From Asterias rubens (taxonomy: Eukaryota): a stretch of DNA of 42,703 nt. This document shows, piece after piece, positions 730-36,479 of this stretch. Each line of letters starts with the position of its first letter. The stretch's first letter is position 1. A model generated the notes under the pieces. The model had not been told where the DNA came from, made no database searches, and was given only the letters and a program-made list of their open reading frames with translations. A program made the translations under genes and the position numbers. The stretch spans positions 11,119,298 to 11,162,000 of the forward strand of contig NC_047081.1 of assembly GCF_902459465.1 (NCBI RefSeq). Direction: 5' to 3'.

Positions 730-3700
730 ATGACGGCCCCCTCCTCCCAGTCCCACAACCAAAAACAGCAACTCGAAATGCAGCGTGTGGCCGCCGGTCT
801 TGCTGCCGCCGTGTTTTACGGCGTCTGCTCCGGTTCGATGTCGTTTATCAACAAGGCCGTTCTTACCACTTACGACTTTGATTTCCCGTGTTTTATCATG
901 TTTTCTCAGATGGTAAGTCTTACTATGAAATGAGTACTTTATTGTTGTTATATTTATTTTGTGGTTTAGCTGTGTATGCTGCCGCACTCTGCTGGGGGAG
1001 GGGCCGGGGGGGGGGCAGGTGTCCAGACGGCAGACAAAATAAACATATAAATATTAATGGGACAACAAGGAGAAGTCCTCCAAGGGGGTCAACCAACATT
1101 AATTATGTAATGTAAATGTATGTCAGATTTAGCATTAATTTAATTGCTTAAGGAAAGTTCACTAGCAAAAAATTGCTAAATTATAGTATAGTTAGTATAT
1201 TAATTTTGGTTTTTACCCATAGTATAGTGCTTATTATAGTAGATAGGCAATTTAACTTGCCATTCAAACAAAAGCCAGGCTTTACTAAGTACAGTTATTA
1301 TTTTGGGGTGATGTTAGTTAGTTGCGATAACATTTGGAAAAGTTTCCGTATGGCGCCACCACTTTTTCATTCTATATGAAATAATATAGTATCTAATTTA
1401 CCTCAATGAAATATCCCTTTTTGTAAAATTGAGTGAAAAAGTGGTGGCGCCATACGGAAAGTTATCCTAACATTTAACCCTTCTCTTGGCCTTCGTGAGG
1501 AGGTTACGTTTACCGCAACACAAATATTTGATTTTTACCACAACACAAATATTTGATTTTTACCTTCAAAGTGTTATTTTTCACAACTTTTATTAACATT
1601 CATCTATTGTTTTTCTTTTTTTCAGATTTTCACGGTGACTCTGCTGACCTTTCTAGGAAAGATCAGTCAAGTTTCCCTACCGACTGCCTCCGTTCACAAC
1701 CTCAAGATTTGTTGTCTTCCGTCATTATTCTGGCTACTCCACGCCGTACTTGCCCTACATGCCTTGAGTGGGATGAACATCGCCATGTACACCGTACTAA
1801 AAAGATGTGTGCCTCTGATGAATCTGTTGTTAACGCCTTTACTGATGAAGAAAGGAACCCCAAGGCTGGCTGTGGTGGGCTCTGTATTGATGATGACTGC
1901 TGGGTGCTTTTTTGCAGGTAAGGGAAGGGGCTGTTACTTCACTGGTAATAATGGATAGCACTAAGCGTTATCGATCGCCATATTTGAGATGAAACAATGG
2001 AAAAGTGCTTGCGTGTACTCGCTGCACACAACTCTCAGCCAATGATAGCCTTGTATGCCTGCACATTTCATCAAATATGGCGTCGATGACGCTTAGCGCA
2101 ATCTATCTATAGAGGCAGCAGTTTCCTCTTTGGCCATATAGTTTGCCATGGTGCCCCTTAAAAATTTTCCAGCAGAAATTGACATTGCTTTTCTAGAAAA
2201 TAGATTCTCTACTATACAGTAGTTGTTGCTTTGATGTCTTGAAATAATTTTCATATCAGTATGCTAACTGTTTCAAGGATCATGGGTTAGTCTACATTTA
2301 TTTGCTTATAAAACTGATTTAGTTATATGATTTGTTTTCACTATTTATAATGCATGACATCAAAATGTTTACCACTTACCCCCCCCCCCTTAAAACTTGT
2401 TCTACTCGCACATACTTTTATTTGTAAAATGTGATATTTAATTTTTTTAGGAAACCATTGATATTACAGTATTTTTAGTTTTGTTTTCTTGTCTGTTATT
2501 TTTTACATAAAATGTTACTTTATCTACTCTATATTAGTTTTACAACCAGATGTTTGGCAGCATCTACCTAGCCAACGGATCGATCGCAGTAATTGCTAGG
2601 CCTATAGATACTTTTGTCTCTCCCACCCTTCTGGAAGTATTGTAGTGTTTTGTATTGTTGTGTTAATTGGCTGAATATAATAATAATAATAGGCCTAGAG
2701 GCATTATGAATTAGGTTGGGTCGTGATTGCAATGTGGATGATTGTAATAGTATCGTACATGTAGTTCTATCAGTGTGTGTTAAGGAAACTAAAGAAATAG
2801 GCTAGCAGTTTTGATACTGTTTCAATTAAGGATTTGAAACTTTGCATGGTGGAAGGGGGCCGAAGTATTTATTTAACAAAGAGAATATCTCTTTCAATAT
2901 CTCTTTCGTGATTGCAATGTGGATGATTGTAATAATATCGTACATGAAGTTCTATCAGTGTGTGGTTTAAGGAAACTACAGAAATAGGCTGTCAGTTTTG
3001 ATACTGTTTCAATTAAGGATTTGAAACTTTGCATGGTGGAAGGGGGCCGAAGTATTTAACAAAGAGAATATCTCTTTCAGTATGCTGTGATCATCTTCAG
3101 GAGTTCTTCAGGAGAAATACTCTGATTGTCTTCCCCTCCAGACGATTGGAGCTTACTGTTCGATGAACTTTACAGAACGACCACTACTCAAAAGAGATTT
3201 TTCACATGGTGTTACCACAAACCTCTCTTAGCAATGTCATTTTGTTTGATTGTGATTTCGATTTCACACCAATCATCTAGGAATGGGAGATCTGACCTTT
3301 GACCTCCAAGCCTACACCTACGGAATGTTGAGCGTAGTCTCCCAGTCCCTCTACCTAACCCTCGTGCAGAGCATCGGGATGCAGCAAGACGCTTTCTCCC
3401 CAGCGGGCATCATGTACCTCAACTGTCTCAACTGCCTTCTGCCGCTTTTTGCTGTCTTGTTCCTATCCTCAGAGATCTCGGGTATCATGGACTTTGAGGA
3501 CCTGTCTTCCCCGAGGTTCCTCATGATCTTCGCCCTCGTTGTCTCAATGGGGTGCGTTCTAAACTACGCCATCTTCCTATGCACTATCTTGACCTCTGCC
3601 CTCACCACGAGTGTCGTGGGGGTCATCAAAAGTGTCGTTGTGGTGGCAGTTGGGATGTTTACACTCGGAGGGGCGCCAGTGACTTTACTGAGCACAATCG

Positions 3701-3849
3701 GGATCTGTATGAACACGCTGGGTAGCAGCTGGTACACGTACGACAAGTACCGGGCAAGGATTGTAAACAATGGCGAAGTGGACAGTGTATCAACGAGTAA
3801 AGTTTCTACAGCTCCAGCAACCGGGAATATAAATGGGTTTCACAGCTAG
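730..3849 (+). CDS. SLC35D3: SLC35D3-like nucleotide-sugar transporter, 347 aa, 3 exons
   Basis: Exons 730-912, 1626-1917 and 3281-3849 have GT-AG ends, phases 0 and 1, and total 1044 nt. The protein is multi-TM. Motifs FYGVCSGSMSFINK, MYTVLKRCVPL, GDLTFD and SALTTSVVGVIKS fit SLC35D, and KRCxPL and GVxKS are closer to D3 than to D1/D2. Confidence 0.85.
1336..1467. mobile_element. 132-bp MITE with GG termini and an 8-bp target site duplication, nested in a hairpin mini-element
   Basis: TAACATTT at 1328-1335 and 1468-1475. Perfect 27-bp inverted core at 1343-1369 / 1434-1460, with termini GGAAAAG.../...GTTATCC. Confidence 0.8.
1954..2107. mobile_element. MITE with about 35-bp imperfect terminal inverted repeats
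   Basis: Left arm GCACTAAGCGTTATCGATCGCCATATTTGAGATGAAA; reverse complement of the right arm GCGCTAAGCGTCATCGACGCCATATTTGATGAAA. Confidence 0.7.
2721..3078. repeat. Tandem duplication, 2 copies, period about 185 bp, in SLC35D3-like intron 2
   Basis: TCGTGATTGCAATGTGGATG...GAGAATATCTCTTTC starts at 2721 and again at 2906 with a few substitutions. Confidence 0.9.
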
Positions 3850-8018: not shown

Positions 8019-8171
8019 AGGCACTGGACACTATTGGTAAATACTCAAAATACATGTTAGCATAAAACTTACTTGGTAACAAGCAATGGAGAGCTGTTGA
8101 TAGTATAAAACATTGTGAGAAACTACTCCCTCTGAAATAACAAAGTAAATTACCAAAGGTGTCCAGTGCCT
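8019..8171. mobile_element. Internally deleted Kolobok-type MITE
   Basis: TTAA|AGGCACTGGACAC ... GTGTCCAGTGCCT. The interior matches, in inverted orientation, the copies at 8981-9258 and 21339-21691. Confidence 0.75.
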
Positions 8172-8222: not shown

Positions 8223-11200
8223 TTAGAATTTGTACTCCTTGCTCTTTTGGAGTGACGGCATTACGTCACTGAGGTTCTGGTCTAGTTTCTGATACCCGTC
8301 GTTGTTGCGTCTCCGGCGTTCGCTGGCATTTCTTCCCTCGATGATGACAGCAACGATCTGGAAGGAAAAGAGTCATGAATAATGCATCAGTTTCTCATGA
8401 ATAATTCATGCTGGTCATGAAAGATGAGTTAACATGGCAGGTAAACCAGTGTTAAAGGCAAAGTATACCTTTGGTTTTAACCATTCGATAGTTTTAATCC
8501 TACATAAAAGTATATAGGCCCTACAATAAAAGTAACCTGGGAAAATTAGGTAGTAGCATTTTTATATATCGCTGAAAAATTCACAGCGGTCATGTCCACA
8601 TAGGAAGAATAATCCATAATAGGAGACTTTCCAACGCTAGGTGGCAGCAGACATACCGGGTAAATTTCCATTGTTTACGTAGTTCTGAACATGCGCATAA
8701 TTCTGAGAACAATGGATTTACCCAGTAAGTCTGCTGCCCTCTATCGTCCCAGAAAGTCTCCCATTGGAATATACACAATCTGAGAAACGTATCGGACAGT
8801 AATATATTTCAGATCAAAATTTGGGGAGATAATACATCTTTTTCCAATAACCGCATTACTTCAAAGTGAAATGTTTCTCAAAAATGCTTTACTCTATCGA
8901 AAGCTGCTGTACTTCTAACCAGTAAGTTTTTATTTCCATTTTTTGAAGAGTGATAATTTATTGAACTGCGTACCTTCCCGGACATTGGTAATTGTCAAAG
9001 ACCAGTACGCTATTCTCACATGGTTGATCCCACTTGGTCTCACGTGGTGTCATCGAATTTGCAGATGCATAACAAAAGGCTTCAGCTGAAGTCTTATTAT
9101 TTGAGTGAGAAATTACCTCTTTCTCAAAAACTACATCATTTCAGAGAGAGCCGTTTCTCACAATGTTTTATACTCTCAACAGCTCTCCATTGCTCGTACC
9201 CAAGTAAGTTTTTATGACAACAATTATTTTGAGTAATTACCATTAGTGTCCAGTGCCTTTAAAAAAAGAGGAAATTCTGGAGGATAGAAAAAAATATAAA
9301 AAAATAAGGTGAACCAACCCTCTGTTTGTTGTGATACATGATGTATGTCGCCATGATGATGATGATGGCAATCAGAGAGTACGCCATAAAATGACTGCTC
9401 GATTCTTCTTCATCGAGATCCATAGAGCTGATCTCGGGCATCTTAAAAATTGTCTTCTCCTTCTCCAGGTTCTCCACGTAACCATCACTGTTTCCACCTT
9501 CTAATTCTTCATCTTTTATGTCAGACTGCTTATTTGAGTCAAACATCTGGAAAAAAAAAGAAGAAAATTAGTAAATAATAATAATAATACTAAGTTCTGG
9601 TTATCACACCCTCTAGGGGTGTATCAAGGCCCTCAGTATCGTTTCTTACAAGATATGTGGAGCTACGTTTTGTAGTATGAGACCTTTTTCTTTACAGGAC
9701 CATGTAACGGTTTACAGGGTGCTGTGGCGCAATTTGCAGCCGGTCAGACCAGGAATCACTGGGGTGGTAAACCCCTTCAGGGCTGTATGCTTCGTTTTTG
9801 AAAGGGCAAGGGCACCAAGGCATTTTCTTCTTGGTAAAGGGCACCCTATGATGAAATTGCAAATTTGTACTGGAGCATTTCAAGGGCACCAAGGCAATGA
9901 CCAGGGGACACGGAGGCAATCGCCTTCATTGCCTCCGTGAAGTATCAGGCCTGCCCCTTCTCTTTGTGATAAGTACACTGGGTTCCTTTACGTGCATTAC
10001 ATCACATATTTTGTGAAACTTTATACACAATATCAACCTCTACCCTTACAGGTACCCACTTCTACACCTGGGTGAAGAGATGCAATTATAGTAAAGTAGC
10101 CTGCTCGATGAAACAAGTGTTACGACCAGGACCTGAACCTACACCCAGATGACTCAACTACCAGACCTTGAAATTGATGCTCATCACCACTCGGCCATGA
10201 CACCCTACAAACTACTTAATCATCCTCTTGGGATGTCGTGGCTGAGCGGTTAAGAGCGCCGGATTCAAGCTTTGGTGTCTGACCAGCAGAGTGTGGGTTT
10301 TCGAATCCCAGTTGTGACAGTTGTGTCCTAGAGAAGGACACTTAACCACAAGCTTCTCTCCACCCAGGGGGTAAATGAGTACCTGTGAGGTCAGAGATAG
10401 TACTTGTGATTGACTTTTTATAGCTGAGTAGCGCATTTGTTGCACAAAGGCTGTATTCTCCCCAGGGAGCTGGCTGAGATGGTTTAAGGAATGATTTAGG
10501 GCAAGGGCACTAAGGCATTTTCTCTTTGGGAAGGGGCACCCTATGAGGAAACTGTAAATTTCTACTGGAGCATTTTAAGGGCACCAAGGCAATGGCAAGG
10601 GGCAAAGGAGGCAATCGCCTCCGTTGCCTCCGTGAAGAGTCAGGCCTGCCAGGGGTAATAATGTTAGGCACTTTGGGACGCCCTCCGGGTGTGAAAAGCG
10701 CTATATAAAAACTAACCATTATTATTATTATTATTAGCCTAACCTGTTTGAACGAGTCTTGTCCACCATCAGGTTCACTGCTGTACTCTGACTCTTCCTC
10801 ATCGCTGAATTCCTCAGTTCCCTTCTGGTTGCCTTTCCCATCTTCCGTTGAAGTTGTTGTATCATCTTGGTAGTCTGGGTAGTGACCTACTCGATCTCCT
10901 ACTTGTGGCTGCACTCCAACTTGTTGTTGATATCCAACTTGTGGTTGATCAACTAGGTCTGGTTGATCTCCTACTTGTGGTTGATATCCTACTTGTGGTT
11001 GATCTCCTACTTGTGGTTGATCTTCTACTTGTGGTTGATCTCCTACTTGTGGTTGATATCCTACTTGTGGTTGATCTCCTACTTGTGGTTGATCTCCTAC
11101 TTGTGGTTGATCTCCTACTTGTGGTTGATATCCAACTTGTGGTTGATCAACTAGTTCTGGTTGATCTCCTACTTGTGGTTGATATCCTACTTGTGGTTGA

Positions 11201-13563
11201 TCTCCTACTTGTGGTTGATCTTCTACTTGTGGTTGATCTCCTACTTGTGGTTGATCTCCTACTTGTGGTTGATCTCCTACTTGTGGTTGATCTCCTACTT
11301 GTGGTTGATCTCCTACTTGTGGTTGATATCCAACTTGTGGTTGATCAACTAGGTCTGGTTGATCTCCTACTTGTGGTTGATATCCTACTTGTGGTTGACC
11401 TCCTACTAGTGGTTGATCTTTTCCTTGTGGTTGATCTCCTACTTGTGGTTGATATCCAACTTGTGGTTGATCAACTAGGTCTGGTTGATCTCCTACTTGT
11501 GGTTGATCTCCTACTTGTGGTTGATCTCCTACTTGTGGTTGATCTCCTACTTGTGGTTGATCTCCTACTTGTGGTTGATCTCCTACTTGTGGTTGATCTC
11601 CTACTTGTGGTTTATCTACTACTTGTGGTTGATCAACTACGTCTGGTTCATCTCCTTCTTGTGGTTGATCTACTACTTTTGGTTGATCTCCTACTTGTGG
11701 TTGATCTCCTACTTGTGGTTGATCTCCTACTTGTGGTTGATCTTCTACTTGTGGTTGATCTCCTACTTGTGGTTGATCTCCTACTTGTGGTTGATCTCCT
11801 ACTTGTGGTTGATCTACTTGTGGTTGATCTCCTAATTGTGGTTGATCTCCTACTTGTGGTTGATCTCCTACTTGTGGTTGATCTCCTAATTGTGGTTGAT
11901 CTCCTACTTGTGGTTGATCTCCTACTTGTGGTTGATCTCCTACTTGTGGTTGATCTCCTACTTGTGGTTGATCAACTACTTCTGGTTGATCTCCTTCTTG
12001 TGGTTTATCTATTACTTGTGGTTGATCAACTACGTCTGGTTGATCTCCTTCTTGTGGTTGATCAACTAGGTCTGGTTGATCTCCTACTTGTGGTTGATCT
12101 CCTACTTGTGGTTGATCTCCTACTTGTGGTTGATCATCTAAAAAAAAAAAAAAGGGGGGGTAACAAATGTTAAAAAGTCAACGAAAAGAAAATGGTGTCC
12201 TTTTATATAATTTTCCTTTTAATTGCAGAATTTAATTTTTAACACCCAATTGCGATCCTTGTTGGCAGAAATGAGTCTAATCACTTAGTCCATAAAGTTA
12301 GGGATAGGATAAATCTAATGAACAATATCAGTTAAGTGTCTTGCTCAGGAACAAAAGTGCCGCGACCAAGTTTCAACCCACTTTGACTCAGCCACCACAA
12401 CTTAAATTTTGTATGATACGTCGACCACGACACGCTGAAAAGTCCATTCATGAATCTTTTTTTTTAATACCTTAAATACCCCATGGTATGAATCCCTACT
12501 CACACTGTGAATGAAGATGTACGTAAGATAATTTACCTGTAGAAGTTTCACCTTCATTAGCCGAAAAGTTTTTAAGAAAAAAGTGAAAATCTTAAAGAAG
12601 AAAGATGAGTTTTTAAGAAAAAAGTGAAAATCACAGAGCAATATTTTCAGGAGAGTCGCCTAACCCCATTGTACATGTATGCAAAAAGTAATAGTTTTTT
12701 GTCTCACTGAGACAAAAGTTACTTTTGTGAAATTGTTTTAATCATTTCTCAAATACTACAGCACCTCAGCAAGTAATATTTCAAGGGAAGCTTTTTACCA
12801 TCATTATCTTTAAATCGTGTTGAGTTTAATGTAAATCTGTAGACATTTGTGTTTTGTATCGTACAAAAAAAAGTACCACCACCCCTAAAACTAGTTGCGA
12901 TAACGTAACCCTCCTCGCCGTCGGGACAAGGGTTACGTTATCGCAACTACCTTAAAACTAACCCTTATTAGGCTGGTATGCATGTGTGTACGTCATCAGT
13001 AGGAAATCAAGTCCCTGGCACATCACAAGATTCATTTGACTAAAGCCACAGAATAAGCTGCAAATGGAACCTTCTGACGGTTGTCCGGCTAGGATATACA
13101 GAGTGGCAAGGGTGCTCTCTTCGACCATCAGTTCATAACCTTCGACTTGAGAGTAGGTCTTGGCTGTCTGGGAGATCATGTTGAAATCGGCACATACGCG
13201 TTCTATGGTTGATCGTTCCTGGGAGAATACATTGTAATACTTTAGAGACTCCGCTTGTGGGTCTCCCTCTTTGCTGCAGGCGCTAAGTGCCAACGACTTG
13301 AACAACTTGCACACTGATTTATCAATACTCAATTCAGTGTTTGAGTTGCAAACACTGTCAAATGGAGATTTGCCTGTGGAAATCGAGGGCAGGTAGAACA
13401 CCGGTGAAGGAATTCCACATTGCTCAAGGTTAAATACATCTTTCCCATCGACCACAGGGAAAGCTTCTGTGACGTCAAGCTGCGGCGTACTCAACAGCAA
13501 GAATGACGTGCCAATTATTATGTGGCAAATGTTCATAACACTTCTTGGTCCTTTGCTGATCAT
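8223..13563 (-). CDS. TGOLN2: TGN38/TGN46 (TGOLN2)-KCT2 family type-I membrane protein, about 785 aa, 4 coding exons
   Basis: Exons 13563-12963, 12137-10744, 9546-9319 and 8357-8223 have GT-AG ends, phases 1, 0 and 0, and total 2358 nt. Domain order: signal peptide, Cys-rich domain, (DQPQVG)n, acidic stalk, SSHF + TM + YHNKQRIVAVIIEGR, then a tail with YQKL (YxxPhi). An alternative start is ATG 13536. The symbol is family-level, because the tail end also resembles KCT2/C5orf15. Confidence 0.85.
8621..8762. mobile_element. GGAGACTTT...AAAGTCTCC MITE family, copy A, inside a larger TTAA-type element starting near 8452
   Basis: Long imperfect inverted arms. It is nearly the reverse complement of 23655-23796 and similar to 28561-28699. 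Confidence 0.8.
8981..9258. mobile_element. Kolobok-type MITE with truncated left end
   Basis: Right end GTGTCCAGTGCCT|TTAA. The interior is homologous to 21339-21691. Confidence 0.7.
9790..9955. mobile_element. Interspersed repeat (AGGGCACC...GTCAGGCCTG family)
   Basis: Near-identical to 10498-10648. Diverged relatives lie at about 15125-15225, 35475-35560 (inverted) and 39305-39430. Confidence 0.7.
10230..10735 (+). mobile_element. tRNA-derived SINE with (ATT)n tail, interrupted by a second repeat at about 10498-10648
   Basis: tRNA-like head (GTGGCTGAGCGGTTAAG...TTCGAATCCC), conserved core (CCACCCAGGGGGTAAATGAGTACC) and tail AAGCGCTATATAAA...(ATT)n. An uninterrupted inverted copy lies at about 25690-25970. 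Inverted fragments lie at about 9970-10205, 12270-12400 and 16520-16620. Confidence 0.75.
10897..12135 (-). repeat. Coding 18-bp minisatellite: 69 units encoding DQPQVG-type hexapeptides (one 15-bp unit)
   Basis: Minus-strand consensus GATCAACCACAAGTAGGA. Length is 1239 nt = 68x18 + 15, and the frame is open throughout. Confidence 0.97.
12892..12949. repeat. Perfect 21-bp inverted repeat with 16-nt loop (hairpin mini-element)
   Basis: TAGTTGCGATAACGTAACCCT (12892-12912) and AGGGTTACGTTATCGCAACTA (12929-12949). Confidence 0.9.
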
Positions 13564-14309: not shown

Positions 14310-17300
14310 ATGATGTTTCGGATGCCTCTCTTCACCACTTTGTCTTTCATTGCAGTTATATCTGTAGATTTTGCACAAGCAACATGCGGTTACAAGGTAA
14401 CAAAACAATACCACTACCAGTACAAAACTACAGCACTACAGACCAGACTAACTACAGACAGTACAGACTGCACAGTACAGTACATGTGCAACGAACTACA
14501 ACAAGCACTAGCACTATCAATAGAGAAGAATAGCTGATAATTTCGAGATTTAGAAGTATAAATATATTTCTAACTTTAGAATTAGATTTAGAATTTAGAA
14601 TTAGAATCATCACTGCCAGTGATGAGATCGATGTTAAAAGCGGAGCCATTAACAGCTCAACAAGGTGGGCTACAATGTCTAATGAATCCTACCATATCAC
14701 TCAAAACACTATTGAGGAAATAATTTGAAGAAAAGGGACAAAAACTTACCAGATCCCCGAGTGAAAGAGTAAAAAATGTTCCAGGTTGAAAATTCGAATC
14801 TTTTTTGGTTGAACTAAACCATTCTGTAAAAGGGGTGTTACAAGGCAGGGTCCTAGGAGATCATGATGGAAGGCGAGACATTGTTCATATAGTTTGTAAA
14901 AATAATATTAAACATTTGATTGTAGAGCTGTCCAGCCACTGTGCCCGGCATGCTGAATGTTCATCTTGTTCCTCACACCCACGATGACGTCGGATGGCTC
15001 AAGACCGTTGACCAGTATTATTATGGAGGTATGTAGAAAATGTCTCACTAAATCATGGTTTAAAGTGATGTTTTCTTGTCTACCATTAACGGAAGCAATC
15101 ATACTTAAACATGCCTTGAACTCGTTCTTGAAGGGTCAAAGCAAGTTCCCTCTGGTAAAGGTGCACTTCTATGAGGAAAATGTAAACTTGTCTGGAAACC
15201 TTGCACAGGGCACCACAGCAATGGGATACTTTTGAGACGCTGGTGGCAGCAGACATAATGGTCCCCTAAGGTGAACATAGACCTTTTCGCAAAAACCATT
15301 GCGCAAGCGCAGACTTATGAATGAGGTGCATTTTGGGATAGATATGGATCAAATTTGATCACCGGCTAGACCACAATGCACCTAATTCCAAGCTTTACGC
15401 GCGCACCCCAGTATTTGCGAAAAGGTCTATGCACAGTACTGCTCACACAGGTCTGAGCATGTGCACTACTGGCGAGAACTGTAAAAAAGGACAGTCCAAA
15501 TGTTTCCCCCTTGTGTGGGTTAATTCAATGTCATGGCCTGGGATTTGAAGCAGCCACCTTAGCCACCTTGAGTCTGTTGCACAAGATCACCATGGCCCAA
15601 TTTCATAGAGCTGCCTAGCACAAAAAGTAGCTAAGCACAACAAAATTATGCTTACCAGAGTATGGTCACCAACCAAATTGCAATCTTTGACTATTATCCT
15701 GCTAATTTTTGCTTCGCAGAAAATTGTTAAGCAATATTTTCTGCTTTTATAAGCAGCTCTTTGAATTTGGGCCCTAGCCACGATACGCCATCTTTTAGGG
15801 GGTACTTATTTGTTGATTTTGTTAATTATTTACAGACCGGAATGACATCCAACATGCAGGGGTTCAATACATTCTTGACACAGTCGTGTCCGAGTTGTTA
15901 AAGGACCCAGAAAAACGTTTCATCTATGTTGAAATTGCTTTCTTCGAGCGATGGTGGAACGAGCAAACGGACAAGATGAAGGGCCTTGTCAAACAACTTG
16001 TTAATGAAGGTAAATAGGATTTGAAACTTTACATGGTGGAAGCATAACTAAGAGAGGTTTGCGGTAACACCACATGAATAGCTCTTTTTGAGTAGTATTG
16101 ATTCTGAAAAAGAGCTGGTGATTAAAGAGTCGTTAACCACAATCCAGCTCCTCAGCTGCGAATAAGGATCATGAGCTTCCCAAAGTATTATAATTATTAT
16201 TATTATACCCAAAGAGCAAAAGTTGCTTGTCAATGCTAATGAAATATTTCACCATCGCCGTACTTTTCAGGGAGATTGGAGTTTGTCAACGGGGGATGGT
16301 GCATGAATGATGAAGCTGCGACTCACTACAACGCCATCATTGATCAGATGACCATCGGCTTACGATTCCTCAAGGAGACGTTTGGCGACTGCGCAAAGCC
16401 ACGGACAGCATGGCAGATTGACCCCTTCGGACACTCGAGGGAGTATGCCTCTCTCGTGGCCCAGGTAAATTAGAACTTCAGACAATGCCCTTCAATTAAA
16501 GGTGGAGTGAAGCAATTATAGTACAAGTATAGTACATGACTGGGATTCGAACCCACGCTCTGCTGAACAGAAACACCAGAGCTTGAGTTCGGTGCGCTTA
16601 TCCGCTTCGCCACAACACCCTATTCTATTATTTAGAATGGGCGCTTTATAAATCCATTTATTTTTATTTTTATTATTATTATTATTATGGTTATTTTCTT
16701 GGACACACAGATGGGATTTGACAGTCTGTACTTTGCTCGACTGGACTACGTCGATAAGGCAACGAGAATTGCAAAGGACAGGATGGAGCAAGTGTGGCAT
16801 ACATCACAGAGTCTTGGCAGTACCTCGGACCTGTTCTTCGGGGCATTGTTTGCCCACTATGGCCCGCCCAAAGGCTTCTGCTTCGATACCTCCTGCAATG
16901 ACCCCCCCATCATGGTACGGCACCCAAAATCAGTAAATCTCGCCTTGCTTGGCCTGCAGTTTAAGTCAATGAGAGACCAGCTTTTCGCGGGACTTTCTTG
17001 ACTAAGTGCTGCAAGCTTTGCCTAGTCATGGTTTTCCTCTTTGTTTTTTAATTCATTCCCGTTGTTGATTTTTCCTGTCATTCTCTGAGTGCTTTGCAAC
17101 CTTAAGAAAAGGCGCTATATATTATATAAGGCGCTGTTATTTTTAAAAACTATCCACACAAATCACCAAGATACAATAAAACTTACCTGTCGAAATTTCA
17201 TTTTAAAAGGTGGTCATGCTCTTGAGATATCGCCGCAAATCCAGCGCGGATATTCCCGTAATTGGAAAACACAAACTTAAAAAACGTTTCATCGTATTTA

Positions 17301-33035: not shown

Positions 33036-33276
33036 GGGAGAAACTCGTTTTGATACACCAAAGTGTAGGATAATTGCTTTACTGTAAAATAATTTGTGCA
33101 AAACTACAATTCCACAAATCAAATCAAACTTCTTAAATGAATAATTTGAATCCATTGTTTTCCTACCAGATTCTCTGGAGCCGAAATGGCATACTCTCTC
33201 CGATGTCTCTATACGATGTAATTCATTTCAAGATTTTTAAAGAGGAGGGAGAACTTGCCAGAGTTTGCCAGCAAAC

Positions 33277-34919
33277 ATGTCTGCCTCGGCAGATGTGTCC
33301 CTGAGCAAAGGGAGCCAGCCGAAAAGTAAGCGGTCCTTCATTGCCCGCCTGCCGTCTTTCCGCAAGAAAAAACATACTCCAGCTAAGGAGTCGGAACTTG
33401 ATATGCACTTAAGGAGTGCAGAGGAGGATCTGAATGGTGGTGTGAAGATAAGGCCCCCTAGCCAGGTCAAAAATCGCAAGGATGACAACGTGAAGAGGAA
33501 GTCCAAAACGTCTTCGATTGTCGCGAGCTACGAGAAGCGTTTGAGTGATCTGAAGGATGAAGAGAGCAGAACTAATGGTAAAAAAAATGGAAATGGAAAA
33601 ACATCTCCTGTGGACAATGGCGGGAAACAAAGTCCCCAGGGTGGGGCTACCACAACGACGACCCAAAAATCCTCGCGGTTTGGCTTTGGTTTTGCCTGGC
33701 AGAAAATCTCTTCTTTCGAGAACGGCAGTGGCAAAAAGACAGAGTCAAAAAAGCAAAGGGACGAATTGAATGCAAACATCCAGCAAGCTAGGGGTAACAT
33801 CAAGAGCCTGAGTTTGGACCTGGAATTACCCCATGGCTCCCCGCCAGACAGGGAGTCGACGAGTAGCGTCAAAACGCCGGAGAGTGATCGCAGCTCCTGC
33901 AGTTCAAACAGTAGTTTCAAAGTCTACGGGCAACCCATGCTGTACAAAAGTGTCTTCAGTGACGAGCCGAGGGGGCTTAAACGCCAGGCCAGCAGCAGCC
34001 AATCAGAGGGTTTTAACTCCAGCGGGATAAGCTTGTCAAGCTCTACATCCCCGCTGCATGATAAACTGAGAACTGCTGGAAGTGCAGCAACCCATGTTGA
34101 TAACTCTGAAAGCATATCACGGCTGACTCAGATGAACAGAACTTTCAGCAAAGAAGACAGCGGTGGTGGCGTTAATCCCAGTATTCATGATCGGACATAT
34201 CCTATCGAAGAATCACCGACTTGTATTGTGAACACTACTTTCAAGCTGGAGCCCGGAGACTACAGTGCTGAGAACACTGGAACGTCTGTCGAGCAGGAGT
34301 TACCTCAAAGTTCTCCCGGGGTGGTCAGGAAGGAAAACTCAATTTCCTGTGCTCGGGATCCTCCAATCAGTACAGCAGTAGTAAAGGATGGTGACGCGCC
34401 ATGCGAGTCAGGATCTCAGTCCAGGGCACTCGATAAAGTCACTCTGCTGAGGCAAGACGTTTCCCGACCGAGCGCTGCTAGCCCAGCCCAAGATATCCCG
34501 AAGGAAATCAATCCGCTGTTTGCTTGCATTAAAAATACTGATCCTTTGGTATCGCCAAGACATCGACCTACCTCAAACACTATGGGGGCTGTCCAGTCGT
34601 CCGCGGATGCTTTTTCCACGCCTGCAAGACCAGTTGAACTTCCCCTGCACCTCCGGAACCCCCACATCAGCGCCATAAAGCACTGTTCGGAGTCCCTGGA
34701 CTCCTGCGAACTGGACTCGTTGTGTTCGGAGGACCTCATGTGCGACAGCCGGTACCTGGATGACGACATGTTTGATACGAGAGACGAGTCGTGTCACCTT
34801 AGTCGCAGCTTGAGTGTGGAGGAAACGGCGGCCATGCACAGGGCACAACTTGGCTGGTCGGGTCGGGCCAGGGCCGTCAGCGTGGATCAGTTGCCGACTA
34901 ACTCCAGTCTGGAAAAAAG
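33277..34919 (+). CDS. First coding exon of a CCSER1/2-like serine-rich coiled-coil protein (gene continues downstream)
   Basis: Long, GC-richer open frame. Acceptor CCAG ends at 33169, an in-frame TAA lies at 33238-33240, ATG is at 33277, and the donor is AG|GTGGGT at 34920 (phase 2). From recollection of the family, N-terminal KRSFIARLPSFRK resembles CCSER1 RRSTLVSRLPIFRR, and LDSCELDSLCSEDLM resembles the CCSER SCELDEDDLML motif. Confidence 0.7.
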
Positions 34920-36479
34920 GTGGGTCATAAAAACTACACACAGGATATGCCCCTCTTACTCCTAACTCAATAAATCTGCAATGTGTAATAGGGAGGACAG
35001 ATGTGAGTAAGTCTGGGTCCTTTAATTGTTGGATTAGGTCTCCAGCGCTGTTTAAATGAGAGAATGAGTAATTTCCCTGTCAGAATGGTTTAGTCTGACA
35101 TTTAGTGTTGAGGCGCTACGTCTGTTGTTTTCCAGTTTAAATTGAGGATTTACTGTCAGACTATAATGTACTGTACAATGTACTTTTAAAATAACAAACA
35201 GACACTCCCAATTGCCTTTATTGGTATTGTAAATGTTTTACAGGCAAACTTTGCATTTTGAACACCCCTGTAAACTGACCAGCATGAAATTCCAAAAGTG
35301 CACGTCGGTTTTTAATAAGTTCCGGGTGCCCACTTAAACACCTTCTTCTCCTTCCAGGTATCTCCAGGCGCACTTGTTACCATTCTCTATTCCTTCAAAA
35401 TCCAACTGCATGTTTTGTATTTGATTCTGTTGAACTGAAGACTGCACTCATAAATTGCTTTTCATGGGTTGAGGACAGGCCTGGGATTACCCAGAGGTCA
35501 TATGGAGGCCTTGGCCTCTGTTACCCTGGTCTTGGCCTTGGTGCCCCTCTAGCAGTTTCATATAGACTTTAAGACCACTTAGTGCTCAGTTGTTTTTGAA
35601 AACTAAGCATTTGGCAAGCAAACCAACTGTTAGGAGAATTTCATTTTGCTACAGTATGTCAACGAATTAGGTATTTCAAAAGCATAATTTTATGTACAAT
35701 GTGTCACTATATCAGTACAAATTTCTTGTGTCAGAACATGTTGTAGCATGGTTGTAGTGTACATTATGATACATTGTAACAATGTTGGCCTATCACATTA
35801 GGAAGCAGTGATCAGTGCAGCAGATCAGGAAGCATGGAAATCGCAGACAACAAAGCATAGTTTGTTTCACTTGTATTTGAAGTGTTTCATTTCTACACAC
35901 ACAGTACAAAGAAATATGACCAACCATGAAGTGCAGTGTATCAATTCATGCATTCAGATTTTCACAACCTTTTCCTTTTATTTAGCTGACAAACATGACA
36001 AAAGAAATGAAATTACACTATTGTACCATGGAGGAATGATTTATTCTTCCATGATTGTACATTGTACATGAAGGCTACTTGACTTACACATGTATAGCGA
36101 GTACAATACGTACAAAACACAGTGTGTAATCTCCATAATGGATTAAAAATGGGAACAGTTGTGCACAGTTTATTATTATAACTATTACTAATAACAACAC
36201 AGTGCGTGAATTATTTGTGTTTATTACAGTGTATAGTTAGTACCCATGTAGGCCTAGTAGGATTTGTACAATAAGCTGAACTTGCAGCTCTCCCCAATGA
36301 CTGTTCATTATTAATCCACACAGGCTGGGCCGCTATGCTACCCAGTGACGTCAGAAGCCGATAAGTACTGCATTCAGCCCTGACTCACTGCGCCATATGC
36401 TTCGGCAATTACTTACAGTACAGTTGATATTCCCAAATAGTCTGAAAAATGTAGATGTTTTGAATAGTACACTGGAAAA

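What the first reader, a model, noticed from the sequence alone, without database searches (positions are those of the whole stretch)
10744..12137. TGN38-family protein with a 413-residue Ser/Thr-free (DQPQVG)69 luminal repeat domain
Seen: one 1394-nt exon, in frame with both neighbours, encodes 69 tandem D/Q/P/V/G hexapeptides with essentially no Ser or Thr. Known: mammalian TGN38/46 luminal repeats are Ser/Thr-containing and heavily glycosylated. Inference: an independently evolved, non-mucin, acidic and disordered repeat that compositionally recalls elastomeric or low-complexity Gln/Pro/Gly repeats. It could act in cargo condensation, Ca2+ binding or transglutaminase crosslinking in the TGN or secretory granules.
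Basis: partly seen in the sequence, partly recalled or inferred. Interest (0 to 1): 0.7.

Follow-up and report, generated by a model that had tools for sequence, protein, structure and literature searches.

The report
Sea-star TGN38/KCT2-family protein, acidic repeat
A transcribed sea-star gene of the TGN38/TGN46–KCT2 membrane-protein family has a luminal domain made mostly of 69 tandem copies of the hexapeptide DQPQVG, with no sugar-attachment residues; this is an unusual but not category-breaking variant of a family whose luminal repeats are already known to evolve fast.

Summary
Window 12137-10744 (minus strand) is one 1394-nt exon. It holds an 18-bp x 69.2 tandem array (10893-12135) that reads as 68 hexapeptides plus one pentapeptide, 413 residues, consensus DQPQVG. 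The array has 0 Ser, Thr, Asn or Cys and a net charge of about -71.

Only this frame is open through the whole exon. It joins its neighbours through canonical GT-AG sites to give a 4-exon, 785-aa type I membrane protein.

Spliced transcriptome contigs from four runs (four studies) join 10744|9546 and 9319|8357 and run into the array. The exon1-exon2 junction could not be tested with reads.

The transmembrane segment and tail match Pfam PF17818 (KCT2), the family that also covers TGOLN2/TGN38. The tail carries YQKL where TGN38 has YQRL. This is the only PF17818 locus detected in the 417.6-Mb sea-star genome, so it cannot be assigned to TGN38 rather than KCT2.

The array is unique to this locus and had no relatives among 5.8 billion protein clusters (255-812 aa). 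AlphaFold predicts no structure for it. It has higher-order periodicity, and an in-frame indel polymorphism lies at its edge, so it behaves as a lineage-specific coding minisatellite.

The proposed functions (condensation, Ca2+ binding, crosslinking) remain untested. Verdict: new variant of a known kind, moderate-to-low interest. The scan noted this same stretch once before, as the same first-stage note.

The parts
12963..13563 (-). Exon 1 coding part: ATG at 13563, a signal-peptide-like N-terminus (about residues 1-34, 13462-13563), then an orphan region of about 166 residues with 8 Cys. It ends in phase 1, with GT at 12962-12961.
   Evidence: Hydropathy peak at residues 8-26. No Pfam hit, no atlas hit, and only same-species or near-species unspliced ORF fragments among 1.84 billion representatives. 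Single copy in its own genome. The runs that carry the spliced exon 2-3-4 contig also hold 66-94% of the sampled words of this exon.
12138..12962 (-). Intron 1 (GT...AG, with a long polypyrimidine tract before the acceptor).
   Evidence: Read directly from the sequence. The junction is not verified with reads.
10744..12137 (-). Exon 2, 1394 nt: the finding itself.
   Evidence: A spliced contig joins 10744 to 9546 in four runs.
10893..12135 (-). 18-bp x 69 coding minisatellite with consensus unit GATCAACCACAAGTAGGA (DQPQVG). 32 units are identical to the consensus at DNA level. Variant units recur at lags of 11 and 22 units.
   Evidence: Unique to this locus in the 417.6-Mb genome.
10744..10892 (-). 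Non-repetitive acidic linker that contains Ser/Thr (DDTTTSTED..., SDEEESEYSSE...). A 6-nt in-frame deletion, placed at 10890, is seen in 3 of 4 transcriptome runs.
9547..10743 (-). Intron 2 (1197 nt), mostly high-copy interspersed repeats.
   Evidence: Joint 9546|10744 'skips 1197, CT..AC' in all four runs.
9319..9546 (-). Exon 3: an acidic luminal juxtamembrane stretch, the EEESSSHF motif, the transmembrane helix (residues 718-736, 9334-9390) and HNKQR.
   Evidence: Pfam KCT2 23.5 bits, profile positions 98-143. Hydropathy maximum 2.07. Single copy in the genome.
8358..9318 (-). Intron 3 (961 nt). It is absent from the orthologous contig L008 of another asteroid assembly.
   Evidence: Joint 8357|9319 in four runs. 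L008 reads straight through.
8223..8357 (-). Exon 4 coding part: a basic cytosolic tail with YQKL (residues 763-766, 8283-8294) and stop TAA at 8223-8225. The 3' UTR continues to at least 8100.
   Evidence: Pfam KCT2 15.8 bits, profile positions 164-187. Contigs reach 8100-8148.

Best explanation
Shown: a single-copy, transcribed and spliced four-exon sea-star gene (13563-8223, minus strand) encodes a 785-aa type I membrane protein. In order it has a signal peptide, an orphan Cys-containing region of about 166 aa, a 413-aa (DQPQVG)n array, an acidic Ser/Thr-containing linker, a transmembrane helix and a 44-aa basic tail with YQKL. The transmembrane segment and tail place it in Pfam PF17818, the family of vertebrate TGOLN2 (TGN38/46) and KCT2. 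It is the only such locus detected in this genome. The array is a lineage-specific coding minisatellite. Only one reading frame has stayed open, its units vary mainly by amino-acid-changing substitutions that keep the D/E/Q/P/V/G composition, and it shows higher-order duplication and an in-frame indel polymorphism at its edge. Inferred: by analogy with TGN38/46, the YQKL signal (YXXPhi type) and the conserved transmembrane segment keep the protein cycling between the trans-Golgi network and the cell surface. The array would then form an extended, intrinsically disordered polyanion (net charge about -71, one Pro every six residues) that cannot be glycosylated. It would take the place of the glycosylated disordered luminal domain that in human TGN46 is needed for sorting the secretory cargo PAUF. 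It most likely acts through bulk physical properties (length, charge, weak multivalent or cation-mediated contacts) rather than through a specific fold.
For: Array and frame. Gene model with canonical splice sites and a single terminal stop. Transcription and splicing: one contig per run in four runs from four studies joins 8357|9319 and 9546|10744 and continues into the array, while unique intron bins have depth 0-45 against 161-938 on exons. Family: Pfam KCT2 hits on exon 3 (23.5 bits) and exon 4 (15.8 bits) are collinear in the profile. P0006, the naturally intron-less exon3+4 orthologue from another asteroid assembly, scores 48.2 bits against a cut-off of 26.2 and is 88% identical to the window's joined C-terminus over 93 aa. 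The atlas TGOLN2 cluster carries PF17818 in 99% of members. Single locus. Topology: the two highest hydropathy peaks are the N-terminal signal region and residues 718-736, and the tail has pI 9.7. Disorder: AlphaFold2 gives mean pLDDT 37.9 with no secondary structure. Lineage specificity: no relatives of the array and no other copy in the genome. Literature: YQRL is the critical TGN-localisation and internalisation signal of TGN38, and mutating Y or L to Ala, or R to Asp, abolishes it (PMC2119736 abstract); the sea-star K keeps the positive charge. Rat and human share conserved cytosolic and transmembrane domains but only about 25% identity in the bulk of the luminal domain, and the TGN46 luminal domain is disordered and required for PAUF sorting (PMC10928510).
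Against: Nothing here shows localisation or function. The C-terminus resembles KCT2 clusters slightly more than TGOLN2 clusters, and KCT2's function and localisation are poorly known, so the TGN-cycling analogy may not transfer. The window's own exons each fall below the Pfam cut-off because an intron splits the domain, and the joined protein could not be submitted by reference. The exon1-exon2 junction and the full length of the array in mRNA are unverified, because short-read contigs collapse about 60 nt into the array. Codon differences among units are 50 nonsynonymous to 6 synonymous and spread evenly over codon positions, so there is no purifying selection on the exact sequence; that also fits a functionless spacer. 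The AlphaFold run used a single sequence, which is weak evidence for disorder.
Confidence: 0.6

Rival explanations
1. Neutral coding VNTR. The array is a recently expanded minisatellite that is merely tolerated in an already disordered luminal stalk. Its unit sequence, charge and lack of Ser/Thr have no specific role. Only an open frame and rough length or hydrophilicity matter.
For: 32 of 69 units are identical at DNA level, and variant blocks recur at lags of 11 and 22 units, as expected from recent unequal crossing-over. Among units, 50 codon differences are nonsynonymous and 6 synonymous, with equal spread over codon positions. There is an in-frame 6-nt indel polymorphism at the array edge. 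No relatives exist elsewhere. In mammals too the bulk of the luminal domain is poorly conserved.
Against: 73 nucleotide differences from the consensus produced no stop in the used frame, while the other repeat frame that is open in the consensus acquired 11 stops. The substitutions stay within a narrow hydrophilic/acidic/aliphatic set, and none introduces Ser, Thr, Asn or Cys. The array makes up over half of an abundantly expressed protein.
Confidence: 0.3
2. A KCT2-like protein rather than a TGN38-like protein. It may be a cell-surface or other post-Golgi membrane protein that is not a TGN-cycling cargo receptor. The N-terminal Cys-containing region would then be the functional head and the array a rigid acidic stalk that projects it.
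For: The best atlas clusters are KCT2 (0.85-0.87) against 0.77 for TGOLN2. The tail runs 19 residues beyond YQKL and aligns to the very end of the KCT2 profile, positions 164-187 of 187. An orphan region with 8 Cys sits at the N-terminus. From memory, not checked here, mammalian TGN38/46 lack such a region.
Against: The atlas scores are below 0.9 and depend on protein length, so they are leads only. The genome has one PF17818 locus, so the KCT2/TGOLN2 split may post-date the echinoderm-chordate divergence. The YXXPhi motif with a basic X is TGN38-like. The N-terminal region has no detectable homologues and no confident fold.
Confidence: 0.2
3. Artefact. The array is misassembled or frameshifted in the genome, or the exon is not part of the mature mRNA.
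For: Transcriptome contigs stop about 25 nt beyond position 10930, roughly 60 nt into the array. The exon1-exon2 junction is untested.
Against: Four independent runs join exon 3 to the 3' end of exon 2 and continue into the repeat. The exon is exactly open in the one frame that links the frames of exon 1 and exon 3 over 1394 nt. The only length variants (a 15-nt unit and a 6-nt polymorphic deletion) are multiples of three. The listed joints (the best-supported of 117) show no alternative partner for 9546.
Confidence: 0.04
4. A structured hexapeptide-repeat rod. VGDQPQ resembles the left-handed beta-helix motif [LIV]-[GAED]-x-x-[STAV]-x, so 69 units could form a solenoid of about 23 coils.
For: Period of six with an aliphatic residue followed by Gly. 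A sub-threshold Pfam hit to LbH_EIF2B (E 0.12, 12.9 bits against a cut-off of 54).
Against: Pro occupies the inward-facing fifth position in nearly every unit. The Pfam score is far below the cut-off. AlphaFold2 gives pLDDT 37.9 and no strands.
Confidence: 0.03

Closest known systems
TGOLN2 (rat TGN38/41, human TGN46/48/51)
   Same: Type I topology. A Pfam PF17818 transmembrane segment plus tail, with an (E)SSHF-type entry into the membrane and HNK+R at its exit. A YXXPhi motif with Gln and a basic residue (YQKL against YQRL). The luminal domain is dominated by lineage-specific tandem repeats and predicted disorder. The transmembrane segment and tail are conserved while the luminal part evolves fast.
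   Different: The repeat unit is a hexapeptide (DQPQVG) in 69 copies, without any Ser, Thr or Asn, so mucin-type O-glycosylation and N-glycosylation of the array are impossible. TGN46, by contrast, is heavily N- and O-glycosylated in its luminal domain. There is an extra N-terminal Cys-containing region, and the tail extends 19 residues past the Tyr motif. Orthology to TGOLN2 rather than KCT2 is unresolved.
KCT2 (keratinocyte-associated transmembrane protein 2, C5orf15), the name-giver of Pfam PF17818
   Same: Best Pfam family and nearest atlas clusters. The tail aligns to the end of the KCT2 profile.
   Different: The KCT2 clusters seen are short (about 190-230 aa) and were not noted to contain long repeats. 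The sea-star protein is 785 aa, with over half in the array. Only profile positions 79-187 of 187 are matched; the N-terminal part of the KCT2 profile is not.
Coding minisatellites (VNTR exons), for example mucin PTS domains
   Same: A long, nearly perfect in-frame tandem array inside one exon, with higher-order blocks, polymorphic in-frame indels, and composition conserved rather than sequence.
   Different: It is not a PTS/mucin domain: it has 0 Ser/Thr. It is acidic and rich in Gln and Pro.
Acidic luminal low-affinity Ca2+-binding or aggregating proteins of the secretory pathway (granins, Cab45-type sorting). This is a functional analogy recalled from general knowledge.
   Same: Very acidic (pI about 4, 75 Asp/Glu in 414 residues over 10893-12135) and predicted disordered, in the lumen of the late secretory pathway.
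   Different: No sequence or domain relationship. It is membrane-anchored rather than soluble. Ca2+ binding was not tested.

Membership tests
Pfam PF17818 (KCT2/TGOLN2 family) | Match to the PF17818 profile above the gathering score (26.2 bits) | tested here: met
   Met with a caveat. The window's domain is split by intron 3, so it could only be scanned as pieces: exon 3 scores 23.5 bits (profile 98-143) and exon 4 scores 15.8 bits (profile 164-187). The pieces are collinear and sum to 39.3 bits. The naturally unsplit orthologue P0006 scores 48.2 bits over profile 79-187 and is 88% identical over 93 aa to the window's joined C-terminus. The joined window protein itself was not scanned, because no reference exists for a spliced product.
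Pfam PF17818 (KCT2/TGOLN2 family) | Type I topology: N-terminal signal peptide, a single transmembrane helix near the C-terminus, and a short basic cytosolic tail | tested here: met
   Kyte-Doolittle peaks at residues 718-736 (2.07) and 8-26 (1.57). The tail is 44 aa with pI 9.7. No dedicated signal-peptide predictor was available.
TGN38/TGN46 (TGOLN2 proper) | Tyrosine-based YQRL (YXXPhi) sorting signal in the cytosolic tail | tested here: met
   YQKL at residues 763-766 (8283-8294), preceded by D-G. Y, L and a basic residue are the positions whose mutation abolishes TGN38 localisation (PMC2119736 abstract).
TGN38/TGN46 (TGOLN2 proper) | Orthology to TGOLN2 rather than to its paralogue KCT2 | tested here: inconclusive
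   Atlas feature scores are 0.85-0.87 for KCT2 clusters and 0.77 for the TGOLN2 cluster, all below the 0.9 reliability line. There is one PF17818 locus in the genome. No chordate sequences could be fetched for a tree: the length filters of the search for homologous proteins returned only asteroid fragments.
TGN38/TGN46 (TGOLN2 proper) | Luminal domain heavily N- and O-glycosylated, with Ser/Thr-containing repeats | tested here: not met
   The array has 0 Ser, Thr or Asn. The whole luminal part of this allele has no N-x-S/T sequon. Ser/Thr occur only in the N-terminal region and the membrane-proximal stretch of about 100 aa. Other alleles carry one N-S-T sequon in exon 1.
TGN38/TGN46 (TGOLN2 proper) | Steady-state TGN localisation with cycling through the plasma membrane | not testable with these tools
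   Needs imaging of a tagged or antibody-detected protein.
Left-handed beta-helix hexapeptide repeats | Profile match and a predicted beta-solenoid | tested here: not met
   LbH_EIF2B scores 12.9 bits against a cut-off of 54. AlphaFold2 gives pLDDT 37.9 and no strands.
Mucin-type PTS repeat domains | Pro/Thr/Ser-rich repeats that offer dense O-glycosylation sites | tested here: not met
   0 Ser/Thr in 413 residues.

The most novel reading that the evidence does not exclude
The (DQPQVG)69 array is a functional, glycan-free polyanionic luminal scaffold. It would bind Ca2+ or condense cargo at the mildly acidic, Ca2+-rich trans-Golgi. That would make this sea-star protein a natural demonstration that TGN46-type cargo sorting depends on the physical chemistry of a disordered luminal domain rather than on its glycans or its sequence.
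Probability: 0.12. Interest if true: 0.6.

Novelty: new variant of a known kind. Interest (0 to 1): 0.32.

Why it matters
The role of the TGN46 luminal domain in cargo sorting was shown only recently, and whether it works through glycans, disorder or condensation is an open question (PMC10928510). A family member whose luminal domain is a long, uniform, acidic repeat that cannot be glycosylated offers a simple natural comparison and an easy recombinant substrate for testing those ideas. It also extends to an echinoderm the pattern seen in mammals: a conserved membrane anchor and sorting tail, with fast turnover of luminal repeats. Beyond that it is one lineage-specific coding minisatellite in an uncharacterised invertebrate gene, and no function has been shown.

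Tried and rejected
2. The search for homologous proteins with exon 2 gave only two weak compositional hits: a bacterial-looking Q/Y-rich protein and a bacterial kinase with a DQ-rich linker. Neither is a relative. The genome's own full-length protein is not in that collection.
3. The search of protein representatives with exon 1 found only an unspliced ORF fragment that is 97% identical, plus a spurious hit at 19% identity to a repetitive 1515-aa protein. Cluster members and their contigs are short metagenome contigs that do not reach exon 2.
4. The search for homologous proteins with exon 3 and with P0006 returned only asteroid fragments because of the length filter. No chordate TGOLN2 or KCT2 sequences could be fetched for a tree.
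5. AlphaFold2 on the N-terminal region gave pLDDT 31, which is unusable, so no fold search was run. The atlas search of that region gave no usable hit.
6. The left-handed beta-helix idea was rejected.
7. Literature searches for KCT2+TGOLN2 and for PF17818 found nothing. The exact mammalian repeat units (octapeptide in rat, 14-mer in human) are from memory and could not be verified in the held papers.
8. The plus-strand 441-aa ORF across the array (LLLVVD...) and the other repeat-derived ORFs are antisense or off-frame by-products of the repeat, not genes.

Full report
**What is in the sequence**

On the minus strand, window 12137-10744 is bounded by a long polypyrimidine tract plus AG upstream and by GT downstream. 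Tandem Repeats Finder reports a single array at 10893-12135, with period 18, 69.2 copies, 88% matches, no indels and score 1954.

Translating 12135-10744 gives 464 codons without a stop. The array is 68 hexapeptides plus one in-frame pentapeptide, 413 residues, with consensus DQPQVG. Over 10893-12135 it contains Q126, V69, P68, D66, G55, E9, L8, Y8, K4 and I1, and no Ser, Thr, Asn or Cys.

**Gene model**

Four exons join through canonical GT-AG sites into a 2358-nt CDS. It encodes 785 aa and has a single terminal stop.

| Exon | Window coordinates (minus strand) |
|---|---|
| 1 | 13563-12963 |
| 2 | 12137-10744 |
| 3 | 9546-9319 |
| 4 | 8357-8223 |

- Exon 1 ends in phase 1. Its last G plus the AT that opens exon 2 makes the GAT (Asp) codon that precedes the first array unit.
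- Exon 2 ends, and exon 3 begins, in phase 0.
- On the coding strand only the DQPQVG frame is open through exon 2. The other frames carry 17 and 65 stops.
- Within the array, the STTSRR frame is open in the consensus unit, yet it has acquired 11 stops through variant units. The used frame has none despite 73 nucleotide differences from the consensus.
- The only length irregularities are a 15-nt unit and a polymorphic 6-nt deletion. Both are multiples of three.

**Expression and splicing**

- In each of four runs from four studies, one contig of 644-701 nt covers the 3' UTR and exon 4. It then jumps 8357|9319 (skips 961, CT..AC on the plus strand, which is GT..AG on the gene strand).
- The same contig covers exon 3, jumps 9546|10744 (skips 1197, CT..AC), covers the unique 3' end of exon 2 and runs on about 25 nt past position 10930, roughly 60 nt into the array.
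- Unique intron bins have word depth 0-45, against 161-938 on exons, so these are transcriptomes.
- Three of the four runs carry a 6-nt in-frame deletion placed at 10890, the 3' border of the array.
- Four single-base differences are listed on the exons: two synonymous (N769, S650) and two conservative luminal changes (M707V, I698V).
- The exon1-exon2 junction is not verified by reads. The same runs do hold 66-94% of exon 1's sampled words.

**Family**

- Exon 3 and exon 4 each hit Pfam PF17818 (KCT2). They score 23.5 and 15.8 bits at collinear profile positions 98-143 and 164-187. Each is below the 26.2-bit cut-off because intron 3 splits the domain.
- A protein from another asteroid assembly (P0006, contig L008) carries exon 3 and exon 4 without that intron. 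It scores 48.2 bits over profile positions 79-187.
- The window's joined C-terminus is 88% identical to P0006 over 93 residues.
[quoted passage not shown] The family therefore covers both TGOLN2 (TGN38/46) and KCT2.
- The sea-star C-terminus scores 0.85-0.87 with KCT2 clusters and 0.77 with the TGOLN2 cluster. All are below the 0.9 reliability line.
- A six-frame search of the whole 417.6-Mb genome with PF17818 finds only this locus. Exons 1 and 3 are single copy.
- I therefore file the gene as a PF17818-family member, possibly a pro-orthologue of both vertebrate genes, and not as TGN38 specifically.

**Architecture**

- The two strongest hydropathy peaks are the N-terminal signal region (residues 8-26) and the transmembrane helix (718-736).
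- The tail is 44 aa and basic (pI 9.7). It carries YQKL at residues 763-766.
- In TGN38, YQRL is the critical localisation and internalisation signal. Mutating Y or L to Ala, or R to Asp, destroys it (PMC2119736). The sea-star Lys keeps the positive charge.
- The luminal side is uniformly acidic (pI about 4 to 4.8). The array region (10893-12135) alone has 75 Asp/Glu against 4 Lys/Arg.
- This allele has no N-x-S/T sequon anywhere in the lumen. Two near-identical exon-1 ORFs from metagenome contigs carry an Ile-to-Asn change that creates one N-S-T sequon.
- Ser/Thr occur only in the N-terminal region and in about 100 membrane-proximal residues, where they sit in acidic contexts.
- The N-terminal region of about 166 aa with 8 Cys has no Pfam, atlas or sequence relatives and no confident fold.

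**Nature of the array**

- It is unique to this locus in the genome. It had no relatives among proteins of 255-812 aa in the 5.8-billion-cluster collection.
- 32 of 69 units are identical to the consensus at DNA level.
- Variant blocks such as DQPDLV-DQPQVG(GTT)-YQPQVG recur at lags of 11 and 22 units.
- Codon differences among units are 50 nonsynonymous to 6 synonymous and are spread evenly over codon positions.
- This is the signature of a young or homogenised coding minisatellite. Its frame and composition are maintained, but its exact sequence is not.
- AlphaFold2 (single sequence) gives pLDDT 37.9 and no secondary structure. That fits disorder and argues against the left-handed beta-helix idea raised by a sub-threshold LbH hit.

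**Mechanism: shown and inferred**

Shown: the gene is expressed and spliced, it belongs to PF17818, it has type I topology and a YXXPhi tail, and its luminal domain is dominated by an acidic repeat that cannot be glycosylated and is predicted to be disordered.

Inferred by analogy:
- The tail and transmembrane segment would drive TGN-to-surface cycling, as in TGN38/46.
- The array would substitute for the disordered, heavily glycosylated luminal domain that in human TGN46 is required for sorting PAUF into CARTS carriers. Condensate formation by that domain is explicitly called speculative by its authors (PMC10928510).
- Between rat and human the anchor and tail are conserved, but the bulk of the luminal domain is only about 25% identical. 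The same contrast appears between the window and P0006, where conservation drops sharply just luminal of the EEESSSHF motif.
- Ca2+ binding, cargo condensation and transglutaminase crosslinking remain untested proposals.
- The main rival is that the array is a tolerated neutral VNTR.

**Verdict**

The independent origin and non-mucin character of the repeat are supported, while the functional ideas are untested. This is a new variant of a known kind and of modest interest.

Noticed in passing
L008:98-448 compared with window 8223-9546: In a contig of another asteroid assembly (GCA_014845345.1) the orthologous exon 3 and exon 4 are contiguous, with no intron 3. An intron-like polypyrimidine tract plus AG still precedes exon 3. 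So the 961-nt intron 3 of the window, which is full of interspersed repeats, is present in one sea-star lineage and absent in the other.
   Followed up: partly
window 10890: A 6-nt in-frame deletion at the 3' border of the array appears in the transcript contigs of 3 of 4 runs. This shows that the edge of the array is length-polymorphic.
   Followed up: partly
window about 13380-13390 (exon 1, LPSISTGK): Two near-identical exon-1 ORFs from ENA metagenome contigs (P0003, P0008) read LPSNSTGK. That allele creates the only luminal N-glycosylation sequon, which the window allele lacks.
   Followed up: partly
window 15886-17001 (+): Exons of a GH38 alpha-mannosidase gene (Pfam Glyco_hydro_38N, 34.9 and 26.2 bits) lie head-to-head about 2.3 kb upstream of the TGN38/KCT2-like gene.
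   Followed up: partly
window 33265-34965 (+): A 566-aa open frame in the most GC-rich part of the window (GC 0.47-0.52). It is Ser-rich with basic stretches and has no Pfam match. It may be a large exon of an uncharacterised disordered protein.
   Followed up: partly
window 3283-3849 (+): A 188-aa open frame with several hydrophobic segments, looking like a multi-pass membrane transporter exon. No Pfam hit at E <= 0.01.
   Followed up: partly
window 8575-8764, 9050-9334, 9715-9904, 10475-10664: Intron segments with word depth of 10^4 to 10^6 in all four transcriptome runs, covered by many short, slightly divergent contigs. These are high-copy interspersed (SINE-like) repeats that are transcribed somewhere in the genome.
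   Followed up: no
window 10848-12173 (+): A 441-aa antisense ORF (LLLVVD repeats) and several SYLWLI ORFs span the array. They are by-products of a repeat unit that lacks stops in four of six frames, not genes.
   Followed up: yes
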